From: Octopus sinensis
Taxonomy: Eukaryota
Assembly: GCF_006345805.1 (NCBI RefSeq)
Contig: NW_021828681.1
Location: forward strand, 1 to 7,970
Direction: 5' to 3'
DNA: 7,970 nucleotides
The translations under genes and the position numbers were made by a program. This document shows positions 1 through 6,688 of the stretch, one piece after another; position 1 is the first letter of the stretch, and each line of letters starts with the position of its first letter. A model generated the notes under the pieces. It did no database searches. It had not been told where the DNA came from and saw nothing but the letters and a program-made list of their open reading frames with translations.

Positions 1-114
1 AAATGTCTGCCCGATATACTCACCACGATATTAATGTAAACTAATTAATATACTAATCTATTACAGTCACAACGGCTGAATATTTCGTGAACTGCTTTAA
101 TAATTATAATACTA

Positions 115-285
115 ATCCTTTCTATTATAGGCACAAGGCCTGAAATTTTGGGTACTTAATTATCGACCCCGAAAGGTTGAAAGGCAAAGTCGACCTCGGC
201 GGAATTTGAACTCAGAACGTAAAGACAGAGGGAATGCCGCTAAAGATTTCGGCCGACGTGCTGACCATTCTGCCAGCTCGTCGCC

Positions 286-286
<1 letters not shown>
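115..286 (-). mobile_element. tRNA-derived SINE, family A copy 1 (internal ~45-bp deletion)
   Basis: Minus strand begins GGCGACGAGCTGGCAGAATGG (Pol III A-box-like) with a B-box-like GAGTTCAAATTCC at 201-213. Shares GAAAGGCAAAGTCGACCTCGGCGGAATTTGAACTCAGAAC with the copies at ~990-1030 and ~6545-6585. AAT-rich degenerate tail at ~98-114. Confidence 0.85.
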
Positions 287-321
<35 letters not shown>

Positions 322-1101: not shown

Positions 1102-1156
1102 TCTGATCCCTATTTACCAGTCAATAATAATAGCTTGCTGTCAATACAACCAATTT

Positions 1157-1691
1157 GATTCTTTTCGGTTTGAACGGCAGTTTGTAATATAATTTCTAGG
1201 TAACTAAAAAATTTTAAACTTCGTATACTAGTAGAATGTATTTATAAAACATCATTTTCTCTTGGCTTTATTGAGAAAATTCTGTAGTTTGTAACATATT
1301 TCGTCTTTAATTTCTTGCATTTCGGCAATTTTAACCAATCAATGACGTCCATTGACGTAAACAACATTCTGTGCCGCATGAATATGTCACTCGTTTAAGA
1401 AACAGATTGAGTTTATTTACATTTGTGAAGAAAAAAGGATACCCTTCCCCCACCCCTAACTCTAACCCTAAATCTAAAATAGATTGAAATGCAATAGCTC
1501 GATACTTGGGTTATAATTATGGGTGACAATTTCATATGACACCGCTAGAGAAAATGGCAGTTTTTTCTAGCGGTGTCATATGTTTTACCTAGCGGTGTCA
1601 CCCATAATTATGACCCTAGTATCGATCTATTGCATTTCAATCTATTTTAGATTTAGGGTTAGCTAGGGTTAGTTAGGGCTAGTTAGGGTCC
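1157..1691. mobile_element. Rearranged MITE copy 1: inverted full body plus fold-back second left end
   Basis: 1157-~1554 is the reverse complement of the MITE at 3263-3682, starting with a degenerate TIR GATTCTTTTCGGTTTGAACGGCAGTTT. 1556-1691 repeats the left end in forward orientation. Flanked by ACCAATTT at 1149-1156 and 1692-1699. Confidence 0.85.
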
Positions 1692-2181
1692 ACCAATTTT
1701 TTTAAACATGTTAAAATAAATATTTGAAATTTCAAGCTGACCTTCGGAGGGTTCGAACTCCGCAGTTGAACAGTTTCGGAATTTTAGCAGCTGAGAGAGA
1801 GAAAGAGAGAGAGAGGGTGGGGTGGAGGTGATGGGTAATAGCGGTGGTGGTGGTGGCAGTCTAGTATGTAACAGTCTAAGTAACCTACATAAAAGTCGTC
1901 CTTATGACTCAGAATAAACTTTATTTTTGTGATAGTGCAGGTCACAGCTCATGAATATGTATGAGGGGAGTGGCGGAGAGGGGGGGAGATAGAAAGAAAA
2001 GAAAGGAAAGAAGGGAGAAAAGAGAAAAAGGAATGAAAGGAAAATGTAAAATGTTAGAGTAAAAAAAAAATGAAAGAATAGTAAAAAAGAAAAGACCGAA
2101 AGTTTGTGTAAAGGCCACACACATACACATTCATATACACACATACATATACAAACATGCAGATTGCGTGAGAGAGAGAGA

Positions 2182-2342
2182 GTGAGAGCAGGAGAGGAGA
2201 GAGAGAGAGAGCAGAAGGAGAGAGAGAGGGAGAGCAAGAGAAGGAGAGAGAGAGAGGGTGAGAGCAGGAGAAGGAGAGAGAGAGAGAGGGTGAGAGCAGG
2301 AGAAGGAGAGAGGAGAGGGTGAGAGCAGGAGAAGGAGAGAGA
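2182..2342. repeat. GA-based minisatellite, unit GGGTGAGAGCAGGAGAAGGA(GA)n, ~29-32 bp
   Basis: Exact 20-mer at 2256, 2288 and 2317, with degenerate units near 2182 and 2228. Confidence 0.8.
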
Positions 2343-2406
2343 GAAAAGAGACAGAGAGGTGTGAAAAGAGGATGTGAAAGAACTTGAGAGAGAAGAAAAG
2401 AGAGAT

Positions 2407-2442
<36 letters not shown>

Positions 2443-2529
2443 AAGGGAAGGGAAGAGGGTCTGAGAGAGAGAAAGAAATGTGGAGAAAGAGAGGGGATAT
2501 AGAAATAGAGTGTGAGAGAGAGGGGGAGT

Positions 2530-2606
2530 GTGAGAGCGAGAGATTGAAAGGGGAGAGAGAGGGAGAGTCGGAGTGAGAGCGAGAGATTGAAAGGGGAGAG
2601 AGAGGG
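2530..2606. repeat. 34-bp direct duplication (period 43 bp)
   Basis: GTGAGAGCGAGAGATTGAAAGGGGAGAGAGAGGG at 2530-2563 and 2573-2606. Confidence 0.8.
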
Positions 2607-3262
2607 GAGAGCGATGGAGAGAGGGTGAAAGCGATAGAGAAAGAGGGAGAGTGAGCGTGGAGCGGGAGAGAGCGAGCGAGAGCTAGGGAGAGAGAGAAAA
2701 AAGAGAGAGAGGGAAAGATGGAGTCAAAGAACTACGAAGAGAAGAAAAGGAGAGAAAGAACAGAAGGACTGAGAAAAAGAGAGAGAGAAAAAAGGAGAGA
2801 GGGAGAAAGAAAGAGAAAGACAGAGACGTGGAGAGGAAGACAGACAGATACGAGTTACTATACGTTAATAGAAACAAAAGCAAAACCAGAGAACGGGCCT
2901 ATCTTTGAGTGATCGTTGGTTATGTATGTATGGAAGAGCCTAAAAACTAAGGCAGGACAATAGAAAAAGCTTGCGGCGTGTGAAGTTTATGCCTTATGTA
3001 TCAAGAATTAAACGCATAATTGAAACTTCCCAAAGCCAGATATTGAAACTGGATCACTAATTTAAACATCAGAGAACCGGTTTCCGTATTGACGTACCTC
3101 CGTCAACACCCAGGAATAATCTTAATAGTATCTAATTATATAAGAGGGCTGCAGACGGCTTCCTCGACAGGAAGTCGTATAATAACTAACCGTAGCAAGA
3201 ATAATAGCTTGCTACCAGTTACAATCACTCTACTATGTCTTTGGATGGCCAAGACAAATGCC

Positions 3263-3682
3263 GGATCTTTTCGGTTTGAACGGCAGTTTTTTCTAGCGGT
3301 GTCATATGAAATCGTCACCCATAATTATGACCCTTGTATCAATCTATTGCATTTCAATCTGTTTTAGGGTTAGGGTTAGTTAGGAGTGGCGGAACGGTAT
3401 CTTTTTTCTTTACAAATGTAAATAAACCCAATCTGTTTCTTAAACGAGGGACATATTCATACGGCACAGAAAGTTTTCACCTCAATAGACGTCATTGATT
3501 GGTTGAAATTGCAGAAATTGAGGAAAAAAAAATAACAAATATCTTACAAACAATAGAATTTTCTCGATAAAGCCAAGAGAAAAAGATGTTTTATAAACAC
3601 ATTCTACCAGTATACGAAGTTTAAAAGTGTTTAGTTACGTGGAAATTATTTTTAAAAACTGCCGTTCAAACCGAAAAGATCC
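3263..3682. mobile_element. Intact 420-bp MITE (non-autonomous TIR DNA transposon), 8-bp TSD, tentatively Merlin-like
   Basis: Perfect 29-bp TIRs GGATCTTTTCGGTTTGAACGGCAGTTTTT (3263-3291 and 3654-3682). Flanks CAAATGCC (3255-3262) and AAAATGCC (3683-3690) form an 8-bp TSD with 1 mismatch. No ORF of consequence. A second copy lies at 1157-1691. Confidence 0.92.
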
Positions 3683-3852
3683 AAAATGCCAACGATCAGG
3701 CCAACCTAAGCTGTAGTTTAACACTTTGACCACGTTACTAAATGTTATGACCATTGACCCATAAGTGTCCATGGTCCTTTGTTTTATATATTTTTTAAGA
3801 CCAGAAGGATAATCCATCATATTTCTGCAATATCTGTATTTTTCTGAGATAT

Positions 3853-4078
3853 CTTATTCTTACTTGTTTCAGTTATTTGACTGCGGCCATGCTGGAGCAC
3901 CGCCTTTAGTCGAACACATCGACCTCCAGGACTTATTCTTTGTAAGCCTAGTGCTTATTCTGATGGTCAATTTTGCCGACCTTCTAAGTTACGGGGACGT
4001 AAGCACACCAATATCGGTTGTCAAGCGACGGTGGTATTGTAACAAACACAGACTCACACACAGATACATATATATATC
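3853..4078 (-). mobile_element. Family B SINE, 3' half plus central (CA/TA) microsatellite
   Basis: TTGTTTCAGTTATTTGACTGCGGCCATGCTGGAGCACCGCC...ACGGGGACGTAAGCACACC matches 6066-6255 (same strand) and 5004-5180 (opposite strand). Confidence 0.8.

Positions 4079-4361: not shown

Positions 4362-4402
<41 letters not shown>
4362..4402. repeat. (AT)n microsatellite
   Basis: About 20 perfect AT units. It gives the IYIYIY ORFs 4230..4415 and 4346..4567. Confidence 0.95.
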
Positions 4403-4404
<2 letters not shown>

Positions 4405-4558
4405 GGTTCTTTTAGTTTCCGTCTACCACATCCACTCAAAGCTTTGGTCGGTCCGAGGTTATAGTAGAAGACACTTGCACAAGGTGCCATGCTGTGGAAC
4501 AGAACCCGGAGCCATGTGGTTGGGAAGCAAGCTTCTTACCACACAGCCACGCCTGCGC
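4401..4558 (-). mobile_element. Family B CORE-SINE, 5' half (tRNA head plus CORE)
   Basis: Minus strand GCGCAGGCGTGGCTGTGTGGTAAG (A-box-like), GGGTTCTGTTCC (B-box-like), then GGCACCTTGTGCAAGTGTCTTCT (CORE-like, 4466-4488). Homologous to 6283-6418 plus 6653-6688. Confidence 0.82.
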
Positions 4559-5003: not shown

Positions 5004-5180
5004 CACCATCACTTGACTACCGATGTTGGTGTGTTTACGTTTCCGTAACATAGCGGCTCGACAAAAGAGACCGATAGAATAAGTACTAGGCTTAAAAAGA
5101 ATAAGTCTTGAGATTGAGTTCTTCGACTAAACGTGGTGTTCCAGCATGGCCGCAGTCAAATGACTGAAACAAATAGAAGA
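5004..5180 (+). mobile_element. Family B SINE 3' half, 5'-truncated, plus strand
   Basis: CACCATCACTTGACTACCGATGTTGGTGTG...CAGCATGGCCGCAGTCAAATGACTGAAAC is homologous to the reverse complement of 3853-4035. It ends in an (AT)n tract. Confidence 0.85.
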
Positions 5181-5256
5181 ATATATATATATATATATAA
5201 TATATATTATATATATATACTTATTTACTTGTTTCAGTCATTTGAGTGCGGCCATG
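5181..5256 (-). repeat. (AT)n tract followed by a short inverted copy of the family B 3' terminus (5222-5256)
   Basis: 5229-5256 is the reverse complement of 5145-5172 at 27/28 positions. Confidence 0.8.
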
Positions 5257-5309
5257 TGTGTATGTGTTTCCATATTTTCTAGGAACATACAAGCAGCTTC
5301 GAACGATCA

Positions 5310-5642
5310 TACGCACACATGTATATATACACTGACACACACACATATATACACTCACACTCACATAGACTCACACACACACACACATATAGACTCACAC
5401 ACACACTCACACACACACACACATATAGACTCCACACACACACACACACACACATATAGACTCACACACACACACACACACACATATAGACTCACACACA
5501 CACACACACACACATATAGACTCACACACACACACACACACACATATAGACTCACACACACACACACACACACATATAGACTCACACACACACACACACA
5601 CACATATAGACTCACACACACACACACACACACATATAGACT

Positions 5643-5678
<36 letters not shown>

Positions 5679-6065: not shown

Positions 6066-6688
6066 TCTTCTTTATTCTTTCACTTGTTTTCGGTCATTAG
6101 ACTGCGGCCATGCTGGGGCACCGCCTTGAAGAATTTTTGTCGAACGAAACGACCCAGGTACTTATATATATATTTGTTTTATTTTTATGTCATTTGAAGC
6201 CTGGTACGTACTCTGTCGCTTTCGGTTGCCGAACCGTTACGTCATGAGGACATAAATACATACATACATACATATATATACGATGGACTTTTTTCAGTTT
6301 CCGTCTACCAAATCCACTCACAAGGCTTTGGTCGGCCTGAGACTATAGTATAAGACATTTGCTGAAGGTGCCACGTAGTGAGACTGAACCTGGAAGCATG
6401 TGGTTGGGAAACAAGCTTCTTATTTCTTTACTACCCACAAGGGGCTAAACACAGAGAGGACAAACAAGGACAGACAAAGGGATTAAGTCGATTATATCGA
6501 CCCCAGTGCGCAACTAGTACTTATTTAATTGACCCCGAAAGGATGAAAGGCAAAGTCGACCTCGGCGGAATTTGAACTCAGAACATAGTGGCAGGCGAAA
6601 TACTGTTAAACATTTCGTCCGACGTGCTAACGATTCTGCCAGCTCGCCGCCTTTGGAAAACAAGCTTACCATACAAACACGCCTGTGT
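6066..6688 (-). mobile_element. Near-full-length family B CORE-SINE (3' half 6066-6255, microsatellite, 5' half 6283-6418 plus 6653-6688) interrupted by a family A SINE
   Basis: The halves seen separately at 3853-4078 and 4401-4558 are contiguous here, joined by (TACA)n/(TA)n. The head is split by the 6419-6652 insertion. Confidence 0.82.
6419..6652 (-). mobile_element. tRNA-derived SINE, family A copy 4, nested in a family B SINE, with an alternative 3' tail
   Basis: A-type head and body. 15-bp TSD TTGGGAAACAAGCTT (6404-6418) / TTGGAAAACAAGCTT (6653-6667) with 1 mismatch. Confidence 0.88.

What the first reader, a model, noticed from the sequence alone, without database searches (positions are those of the whole stretch)
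1149..1699. Fold-back MITE derivative with only one recognisable TIR is still bracketed by a perfect 8-bp target-site duplication
Seen: a right-end TIR at 1157 and a full inverted body to ~1554. A 6-bp spacer TGGCAG follows (5 bp match the TIR), then a second forward left end (1561-1691), making a ~100-bp-arm palindrome (~1455-1554 vs 1561-1670). Both inner TIRs are almost entirely lost. The unit ends ...TTAGGGTCC, echoing the TIR terminus ...AAGATCC, and ACCAATTT sits exactly on both sides (1149-1156, 1692-1699), the same TSD length as the intact copy. The right arm also has a 12-bp reiteration (CTAGCGGTGTCA at 1567 and 1589) joined at GTCA microhomology. Inference: either an inverted dimer transposed as one unit and later lost most of its second arm, or the transposase used a cryptic end inside the telomere-like tract.
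Basis: partly seen in the sequence, partly recalled or inferred. Interest (0 to 1): 0.7.

Follow-up and report, generated by a model that had tools for sequence, protein, structure and literature searches.

The report
Rearranged one-ended MITE copy with hairpin
One copy of a small DNA transposon has had one end replaced by a back-to-front copy of its own neighbouring sequence, most likely by faulty repair of a break at that end, so it is an ordinary relic of transposon biology and probably not a new kind of mobile element.

Summary
Window 1157-1691 is a reverse-oriented copy of the 420-bp MITE-like element seen intact at 3263-3682. It keeps its right-end TIR at 1157 but lacks left-TIR bases 1-24. 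In their place is a forward copy of its own left subterminal region (1555-1691). The result is a palindrome (85/89 matching) around the 6-nt spacer TGGCAG. ACCAATTT brackets the unit exactly (chance about 0.002).

The right end has no TIR. Only its tip (GGACC against GGATC) resembles one, and the remaining 24 bases match at background level. The forward arm shows marks of error-prone copying:
- a strand switch at a 2-nt microhomology
- a 22-nt-period reiteration with a GTCA-to-GTCA deletion
- a 10-nt array expanded to 3.7 units

Best reading (about 0.55): a normal monomer inserted here and made the duplication. Later a break at its left end was repaired in place with template switching and rejoined to the untouched flank.

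Transposition of the whole unit through a cryptic end (about 0.15) is not excluded. No other copies of the family could be reached, so the genome-wide test was not run. Interest is low to moderate.

The parts
1149..1156 (.). Left copy of the 8-bp flanking direct repeat ACCAATTT (target-site duplication)
   Evidence: Directly abuts the TIR tip at 1157. It is one of only two occurrences in the window.
1157..1185 (-). Right-end TIR of the reverse-oriented copy, GATTCTTTTCGGTTTGAACGGCAGTTTGT
   Evidence: 26/29 identical to the family TIR, with mismatches at positions 2, 3 and 28. The 24-nt core is exact.
1157..1554 (-). Reverse-oriented element body, equal to element positions 420 down to 25. It lacks left-TIR positions 1-24.
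   Evidence: 87% identity to 3279-3679 by BLAST; global alignment.
1555..1560 (+). Spacer TGGCAG, equal to TIR positions 19-24 (CGGCAG) in forward orientation. It is the start of the forward arm.
   Evidence: GGCAGTTTTTTCTAG is 15/15 identical to the intact copy 3282-3296.
1561..1667 (+). Forward-oriented copy of the left subterminal region (element positions 25 to about 122), the second palindrome arm
   Evidence: BLAST 1553-1667 against element 17-122. Inverted-repeat blocks match 21/22 and 64/67 against 1462-1554.
1560..1600 (+). Reiterated block private to the forward arm: GTTTTTTCTAGCGGTGTCA / GTTTTACCTAGCGGTGTCA at period 22. The 13 nt between two GTCA motifs are lost.
   Evidence: D1, 89%; three-way alignment.
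1653..1689 (+). Telomere-like 10-nt tandem array TTAGGGTTAG x3.7, expanded relative to the reverse arm and to the intact copy
   Evidence: TRF score 60; three-way alignment.
1690..1691 (+). CC (TCC if the preceding T is included). Possibly the retained tip of the lost left TIR (...GATCC).
   Evidence: Read inward, the end is GGACC against TIR GGATC (4/5). That this is a retained tip is inference.
1692..1699 (.). Right copy of the 8-bp direct repeat ACCAATTT
   Evidence: The chance of occurrence in the 88-nt boundary zone is 1.9e-3.
3263..3682 (+). Intact reference copy of the family: 420 bp, 29-bp perfect TIRs, flanks CAAATGCC / AAAATGCC at 3255-3262 and 3683-3690

Best explanation
This is a dead, rearranged copy of a cut-and-paste MITE, made in place. 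It is not a new mobile unit.

Steps shown by the sequence:
- A reverse-oriented family copy runs from its right-end TIR (1157) to element position 25 (1554).
- Its left TIR (positions 1-24) is absent.
- In its place lies a forward copy of the same element's positions 19 to about 122, plus an expanded TTAGGG-like array (1555-1691).
- The whole is bracketed by ACCAATTT.

Steps inferred:
1. A normal monomer inserted here in reverse orientation and created the 8-bp duplication.
2. Later the transposase cut at the left end, or excised the element so that it was re-copied from the sister chromatid. This put a DNA break exactly at the element/duplication boundary.
3. During repair synthesis the growing strand reached ...CTAGAGAAAA. 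It then switched to the complementary (displaced) strand 6 nt further on, at an AA microhomology, and copied back through the left subterminal region. This made the inverted arm with its asymmetric 6-nt spacer.
4. The same low-fidelity synthesis slipped twice. One slip gave the 22-nt-period reiteration with the GTCA-to-GTCA deletion. The other expanded the 10-nt array.
5. The strand was released in the G-rich array and joined to the other side of the break. That side still carried the intact duplication and perhaps 2-3 nt (CC/TCC) of the old TIR tip.

The product has one TIR, itself mutated at its tip. It should be immobile. Its only likely activity is hairpin or cruciform formation.
For: - Anatomy: as stated in the observation check.
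- One source copy: the arms are 85/89 identical. They share 5 substitutions plus one indel against the neighbouring copy 1.6 kb away, so the forward arm was copied from this element (or its sister) and not from the neighbour.
- Spacer orientation: the spacer reads as the forward strand (CGGCAG 5/6) and not the reverse strand (CTGCCG 3/6). This fits a switch onto the complementary strand of an intact template. It does not fit a snap-back of a resected end.
- Type of change in the forward arm: it has no private substitutions but two private slippage-type changes. This is what error-prone copying gives, rather than slow decay.
- Break position: the outer junction lies exactly at the duplication boundary, where a transposase cuts.
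- Weak case for a usable right end: it is not TIR-like beyond its tip (9/29), and there is no further TIR in the window.
- Precedents: abortive gap repair with template switching and microhomology joins is the accepted origin of deletion derivatives and of the MITE Goblin, whose subterminal sequence was inversely duplicated (PMC3814204). Gap filling with template switching occurs at TIR elements in animals, with a median 2-bp microhomology (PMC8277862). Fold-back templated inverted insertions form at breaks, with one end extended by a polymerase and the other captured by end joining (PMC11724301).
Against: - Nothing in the window shows that a plain monomer ever occupied this site.
- Abortive gap repair usually keeps both TIRs. 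Here one is reduced to at most 3 nt.
- The microhomologies (AA; T/TCC) are short enough to be chance.
- The 137-nt inverted tract is longer than most templated insertions reported in yeast (about 5-34 bp).
- The arms differ at 4 sites, all on the reverse arm (binomial P 0.125), so a different template is not excluded.
- An equally local alternative route, hairpin mis-opening followed by a central deletion, cannot be told apart from strand switching.
Confidence: 0.55

Rival explanations
1. The fold-back unit was formed elsewhere and then transposed here as one piece. The transposase paired the canonical TIR with a cryptic end at …TTAGGGTCC inside the telomere-like tract.
For: - An exact 8-bp duplication of the family's length brackets the unit.
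- Read inward, the right end is GGACC against the TIR tip GGATC, 4/5 (about 1.6% by chance at a fixed position).
- Single-ended substrates are occasionally integrated by Hsmar1 (6.4%) and Sleeping Beauty (0.54%) in cell assays (PMC5224488).
- A Ds insertion in Arabidopsis carries a 598-bp inverted repeat between its TIR and one half of the target duplication. Its authors proposed cryptic transposase sites there (PMC1978519).
Against: - Beyond the tip, the right end matches the TIR at background level (9/29).
- The adjacent subterminal sequence is in the wrong orientation for a right end.
- This reading needs two rare events (making the fold-back, then mobilising it). The in-place reading needs only the first.
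- The canonical TIR tip of this copy is itself mutated (GATTC).
- No second copy of the junction is in the window.
Confidence: 0.15
2. The 8-mer match is coincidence. The structure is an inverted duplication from replication template switching or break repair, unrelated to the transposon end. The forward arm continues to about 1720.
For: The right flank 1697-1720 (TTTTTTTAAACATGTTAAAATAAA) is colinear with, and weakly similar to, the element sequence that would follow the arm (TTTCTTTACAAATGTAAATAAA). P is 0.014-0.035 for local alignment and 0.007-0.10 for colinear alignment.
Against: - The 8/8 repeat abutting the true TIR tip has a chance of about 0.002. That is stronger than the AT-rich flank similarity.
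- The repeat is exactly 8 bp, the family's length.
- Similarity stops after 24 nt.
Confidence: 0.1
3. In-place origin by a different route. The cut left end became hairpin-capped and was opened about 135 nt from its tip and filled in, giving a long palindrome centred on the TIR tips. It was then rejoined to the flank, and a later asymmetric central deletion removed 24 + 18 nt.
For: - It has the same anatomy as the main model.
- The centre lacks 24 nt of one arm and 18 nt of the other.
- By established knowledge, long palindromes are commonly stabilised by central deletions, and off-tip hairpin opening gives palindromic additions in V(D)J-type joining. Hairpin-type repair at Ds excision sites is described in PMC1978519.
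Against: - It needs one more step than strand switching.
- In the 8-bp-duplication superfamilies for which this is known, hAT and Mutator-like elements (title of PMC5499845), hairpins form on the flank and not on the transposon end.
Confidence: 0.1
4. Two separate copies formed an inverted dimer that transposed as a unit and later lost most of the second arm.
For: Two arms in inverted orientation; bracketing 8-bp repeat.
Against: - The arms share 5 substitutions and an indel against the other family copy, and are 95.5% identical against 87% between copies. This points to one source copy.
- The later deletion would have to end exactly at the element/duplication boundary.
- Both inner TIRs would also have to be lost.
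Confidence: 0.04
5. Assembly or read artefact (a chimeric fold-back read).
For: Palindromes are a known artefact class. Read support could not be examined here.
Against: - The arms are not mirror-perfect. They differ by 4 substitutions, a 22-nt-period reiteration and an array expansion.
- The sequence returns to unique flank exactly at a duplicated 8-mer. A chimeric read would not produce that.
Confidence: 0.04

Closest known systems
Goblin MITE of Aedes aegypti, derived from the Tc1/mariner element Ozma (Yang et al. 2013, PMC3814204)
   Same: Subterminal sequence of one end is present in inverted duplicate. The authors explain it by template switching during synthesis-dependent gap repair after excision, followed by a microhomology join with small scars.
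   Different: In Goblin the switch kept both TIRs and lengthened them to 54 bp, so the product stayed mobile and became a family. Here the switch removed one TIR, leaving a single, probably immobile copy. The superfamily also differs (TA duplication against 8 bp).
Abortive-gap-repair derivatives of Ac/Ds, P, Tc1 and Mutator (Engels 1990; Rubin and Levy 1997, as cited in PMC3814204), and gap filling at TIR elements in animals (PMC8277862)
   Same: A break at or in a TIR element is repaired by copying. Interruptions and template switches occur at 1-3-bp microhomologies. The original target duplication is kept.
   Different: Typical products are internal deletions or captures of foreign sequence, with both ends intact. 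Here the captured 'filler' is the element's own complementary strand, and it replaces an end.
Fold-back templated inverted insertions at double-strand breaks in yeast (Yu et al. 2024, PMC11724301)
   Same: An inverted duplication forms next to the break. One end is extended by a polymerase and the other is captured by end joining, guided by microhomology.
   Different: Reported events are mostly about 5-34 bp, against about 137 nt here. The spacer orientation here fits a switch to an intact complementary strand better than a snap-back of the broken end.
Atypical Ds insertion ET500 in Arabidopsis (Langer et al. 2007, PMC1978519)
   Same: One half of the target duplication is separated from the transposon by an inverted repeat, so the duplication brackets 'element plus palindrome'. 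This is the best precedent for the rival 'moved as a unit' reading.
   Different: That Ds kept both TIRs, and its 598-bp repeat came from donor-site vector DNA outside the element. Here the repeat is the element's own end and one TIR is missing.
Foldback (FB) elements of Drosophila
   Same: Inverted repeats capable of snap-back. Their repetitive arms are prone to rearrangement (PMC8277862).
   Different: By established knowledge, FB arms are long, are built of tandem repeats and reach both termini, where they act as the TIRs. Here the palindrome is internal and off-centre and does not include the left terminus.

Membership tests
MITE (non-autonomous cut-and-paste element) | Small size (under about 800 bp) with terminal inverted repeats | tested here: met
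   The intact copy 3263-3682 is 420 bp with 29-bp perfect TIRs. The copy in the finding has only one TIR.
MITE (non-autonomous cut-and-paste element) | Target-site duplication of fixed length | tested here: met
   8 bp in both copies: 7/8 at the intact copy and 8/8 at 1149-1156/1692-1699. Only two copies are available.
MITE (non-autonomous cut-and-paste element) | No coding capacity | tested here: met
   The longest internal ORF is 54 aa. It has no homologue among 5.8 billion proteins.
MITE (non-autonomous cut-and-paste element) | High copy number in the genome | not testable with these tools
   There are only two copies in the window. The TIR core gave chance hits or none in the metagenome, prokaryote-genome and viral collections.
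In-place abortive gap repair / template-switch derivative | Original target duplication retained on both sides of the rearranged element | tested here: met
   ACCAATTT is exact on both sides.
In-place abortive gap repair / template-switch derivative | Microhomology, small scars or slippage at the novel junctions | tested here: inconclusive
   The inner junction has a 2-nt AA microhomology plus a C-to-T change. The outer junction overlaps by T/TCC. Slippage-type reiteration and array expansion lie inside the new tract. The microhomologies are too short to exclude chance.
In-place abortive gap repair / template-switch derivative | Duplicated tract copied from the same element or its sister, not from another copy | tested here: met
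   The forward arm agrees with its own reverse arm and differs from the neighbouring copy at 5 sites plus 1 indel. Arm identity is 95.5%, against 87% between copies.
In-place abortive gap repair / template-switch derivative | Progenitor monomer at the same site in other haplotypes or species; junction unique in the genome | not testable with these tools
   No genome, reads or relatives of this organism could be reached.
   There is one instance in the window, and no access to the genome.
   The right end matches the TIR 9/29, which is background level. Only the terminal 5 nt agree, 4/5.
hAT superfamily | 8-bp target duplication | tested here: met
   The hAT feature is as stated in PMC3517528.
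hAT superfamily | Short TIRs (5-27 bp), typically starting CAG/TAG; duplication consensus nTnnnnAn (Ac; from general knowledge) or nnnTAnnn (Buster; PMC3517528) | tested here: not met
   The TIR is 29 bp and starts GGATC. The duplications ACCAATTT and (C/A)AAATGCC fit neither consensus. With only two sites this is weak. P, Merlin, Mutator-like and other 8-bp families remain open.
Drosophila-type Foldback (FB) elements | Long inverted arms that reach both termini and serve as the TIRs | tested here: not met
   The palindrome spans 1462-1662 only. The left 300 bp of the unit has no inverted partner.

The most novel reading that the evidence does not exclude
The fold-back form is a mobile subfamily that transposes with one canonical TIR and a cryptic GGACC end embedded in a telomere-repeat-like array. 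That would show that this transposase can pair a full TIR with a 5-nt tip mimic, and that repair-made palindromes can seed new MITE families that lack a second TIR.
Probability: 0.12. Interest if true: 0.55.

Novelty: new member of a known kind. Interest (0 to 1): 0.25.

Why it matters
If the in-place reading is right, this locus is a clear natural example of how repair of a transposase-made break rearranges an element. It shows a strand switch, two slippage events and an end-joining junction, all within 140 nt, with the original target duplication kept as a timestamp.

Such events are the raw material from which hairpin-like and long-TIR MITE families are thought to arise (PMC3814204). Most products, like this one, are dead ends.

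Practically, it warns annotators that a target duplication around a one-TIR element does not by itself prove that the unit moved in that form. The roughly 100-bp palindrome may also be a local fragile site or a source of hairpin RNA, but nothing here tests that.

Tried and rejected
1. Finding more family copies. The TIR core was scanned in metagenome contigs, giving 11 hits. All were chance matches with no extension beyond the 19-mer. Prokaryote genomes and viral contigs gave none.

2. Reaching the source genome through called ORFs. Four exact look-ups and one homology search with the 54-aa in-element ORF found nothing.

3. Literature search for printed repeat sequences of this genome found nothing. 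The organism is therefore not identified. From memory alone, the SINE-like repeats resemble cephalopod repeats, but this was not tested.

4. A hidden or degenerate fourth TIR. None was found at 3 or fewer mismatches or by local alignment. The best extra hit scored 9-11, within the range of shuffled sequence, whose maximum is 11.

5. The neighbouring intact copy as template for the forward arm. Rejected: 5 sites plus an indel favour the element's own arm.

6. A composite transposon spanning both copies (1157-3682, right ends outward). Rejected: the outer flanks ACCAATTT and AAAATGCC differ.

7. Snap-back of a resected end. Disfavoured because the spacer is in forward orientation, not reverse orientation.

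8. Rfam and tRNA scans of the window found nothing.

9. Extension of the forward arm into the right flank. This is marginal only. It is kept as a caveat and not adopted.

Full report
**What is there**

The window is eukaryote-like non-coding DNA. It is full of SINE-like repeats and microsatellites, with no Rfam or tRNA hits.

It holds two copies of one short element. The reference copy at 3263-3682 is 420 bp and has perfect 29-bp terminal inverted repeats (GGATCTTTTCGGTTTGAACGGCAGTTTTT). Its 8-bp flanks are CAAATGCC / AAAATGCC, identical at 7 of 8 positions. Its longest internal ORF is 54 aa and has no homologue. It therefore behaves as a MITE with an 8-bp target-site duplication.

**The finding's copy**

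- 1157-1554 is the same element in reverse orientation, covering element positions 420 down to 25. Identity is 87% (BLAST; 364/416 in the global alignment that includes the flanks).
- The right-end TIR starts at 1157. Its 24-nt core is exact, but its tip reads GATTC instead of GGATC.
- The left TIR (positions 1-24) is missing.
- TGGCAG at 1555-1560 is TIR positions 19-24 read forwards, 5/6 identical.
- 1561-1667 is the forward left subterminal region.
- The result is a palindrome. The block 1533-1554/1561-1582 matches 21/22 and the block 1462-1528/1596-1662 matches 64/67. As single-stranded DNA it folds at -92.5 kcal/mol, z = -20.8.
- The forward arm ends in a 10-nt array, TTAGGGTTAG x3.7 (1653-1689), followed by CC.
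- ACCAATTT sits at 1149-1156 and 1692-1699. These are the only two occurrences in the window, and the repeat is exactly 8 bp.
- Placing that 8-mer by chance in the 88-nt zone where arm homology fades has a probability of 1.9e-3.

- The '12-bp reiteration' is a 19-nt repeat at period 22, combined with loss of the 13 nt between two GTCA motifs.
- Firm family homology of the arm ends near 1667.
- The 'echo' of the TIR terminus is 4 of the last 5 bases. Over 29 nt it is 9/29, which a third of all 29-mers in the window reach.

**Where the second arm came from**

A three-way comparison gives these counts over the well-aligned core:

| Pattern | Sites |
|---|---|
| Forward arm agrees with its own reverse arm, differs from the neighbouring copy | 5 substitutions + 1 indel |
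| Forward arm agrees with the neighbour, differs from the reverse arm | 4 |
| Substitutions private to the forward arm | 0 |

The arms are 95.5% identical, while the two element copies are 87% identical. The forward arm was therefore copied from this element (or its sister chromatid). It did not come from the neighbour 1.6 kb away or from an unrelated family member.

What is private to the forward arm is structural. It has the 22-nt-period reiteration with the GTCA-to-GTCA deletion, and the array expanded from about 2 to 3.7 units. These look like slippage during copying rather than slow point-mutation decay.

**Mechanism**

The outer junction lies exactly on the element/duplication boundary. 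A transposase cuts there.

At the inner junction the spacer is in forward orientation (CGGCAG 5/6) and not reverse orientation (CTGCCG 3/6). This is expected if a growing strand left its template after …GAGAAAA and resumed on the complementary strand of an intact duplex 6 nt further on. An AA microhomology lies at that point (TIR positions 17-18). A snap-back of a resected end would have kept the loop in reverse orientation.

I therefore infer this sequence of events:
1. A monomer inserted and made ACCAATTT.
2. Later the left end was cut, or the element was excised and re-copied from the sister chromatid.
3. Repair synthesis switched strands, slipped twice and fell off in the G-rich array.
4. 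It was end-joined to the flank, which still carried the duplication and perhaps 2-3 nt of the old tip (…GATCC, now …GGTCC).

Each step has a published precedent:
- Abortive gap repair with template switching and microhomology joins, including the inverse duplication of subterminal sequence in the MITE Goblin (PMC3814204).
- Gap filling at TIR elements in animals, with a median 2-bp microhomology (PMC8277862).
- Fold-back templated inverted insertions in which one end is extended and the other captured by end joining (PMC11724301).

What is shown is the anatomy. The order of events and the involvement of the transposase are inferred. A local variant, hairpin mis-opening followed by a central deletion, cannot be separated from strand switching.

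'Dimer transposed, then lost an arm' needs a deletion that ends exactly at the duplication boundary. It also conflicts with the evidence that both arms come from one copy.

'Cryptic end' remains possible. The right end read inward is GGACC against GGATC. Single-ended substrates are used at 0.5-6% in cell assays (PMC5224488). An Arabidopsis Ds insertion is known in which a 598-bp inverted repeat lies between the element and one half of the duplication (PMC1978519).

Against it:
- The end has no TIR-like sequence beyond the tip.
- The neighbouring subterminal sequence is in the wrong orientation.
- The model needs the fold-back to arise first and then also be mobilised.

I give it about 0.15, against about 0.55 for the in-place origin.

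**Caveats**

- The right flank 1697-1720 is weakly colinear with the sequence that would continue the arm (P about 0.01-0.1). If that similarity is real, the 8-mer is a coincidence. I rate this at about 0.1.
- An assembly artefact is unlikely. The arms differ in structured ways, and the sequence returns to unique flank exactly at the duplicated 8-mer.
- The decisive tests are the genome-wide count of the junction and the state of this site in other haplotypes or species. They could not be run, because every route to further copies failed.

**Classification and novelty**

The 8-bp duplication fits hAT. The 29-bp TIR starting GGATC and the two duplications fit neither hAT consensus, so the superfamily is left open. 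The structure is not a Drosophila-type Foldback element, because the palindrome is internal and does not reach the left terminus.

This is a new instance of a known kind of event. It is clear and instructive but not surprising.

Noticed in passing
window 107-288, 385-566, 921-1102, 6473-6654: Four copies of a SINE-like repeat of about 180 bp (65-82% identity), all ending …CCAGCTCGCCGCCTT. The copy at 921-1102 ends 54 nt upstream of the fold-back unit. There were no Rfam or tRNA hits.
   Followed up: partly
window 3867-3906, 5232-5271, 6088-6127; inverted pair 3927-4033 / 5004-5110: A second repeat family (…TTTCAGTCATTTGACTGCGGCCATGCTGGAGCACCGCCTT…). Two copies lie in inverted orientation, 81% complementary over 107 nt and 970 nt apart.
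   Followed up: no
window 4370-4538 and 6252-6422: A third dispersed repeat of about 170 bp at 81-84% identity. Each copy is preceded by an AT or ACAT microsatellite (D14/D17).
   Followed up: no
window 5372-5668: A 30-nt minisatellite, CACACACACACACACATATAGACTCACACA x9.7 at 96% identity, embedded in an (AC)n tract. There is also a purine-only GA-rich tract across 2170-2711 and (ATA)21 at 286-349.
   Followed up: no
window 1126-1139 and 3200-3213: The same 14-mer, AATAATAGCTTGCT, lies upstream of both MITE copies, in the same strand orientation although the copies are inverted. It is 17 nt before the TIR at 1157 and 49 nt before the TIR at 3263 (E 0.002 within the window). It could be chance or part of another repeat.
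   Followed up: partly
window 3488-3504 (reverse complement at 1333-1349): Both MITE copies keep a CCAAT-box plus CRE-like motif, GACGTCATTGATTGGTT, in the middle of the element. This is a possible promoter-like module carried by the family.
   Followed up: no
window 1696-1721 and 1745-1762: The right flank of the unit is an AT-rich palindrome, ATTTTTTTAAACATGTTAAAATAAAT (I5). It is followed by a tRNA T-arm-like hairpin, CGGAGGGTTCGAACTCCG, which ARAGORN does not call.
   Followed up: partly
window 1157-3682: The two MITE copies are inverted relative to each other and 1.57 kb apart, with both right ends facing outward like a composite transposon. Their outer 8-bp flanks differ (ACCAATTT against AAAATGCC), so there is no sign that the pair moved together.
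   Followed up: yes
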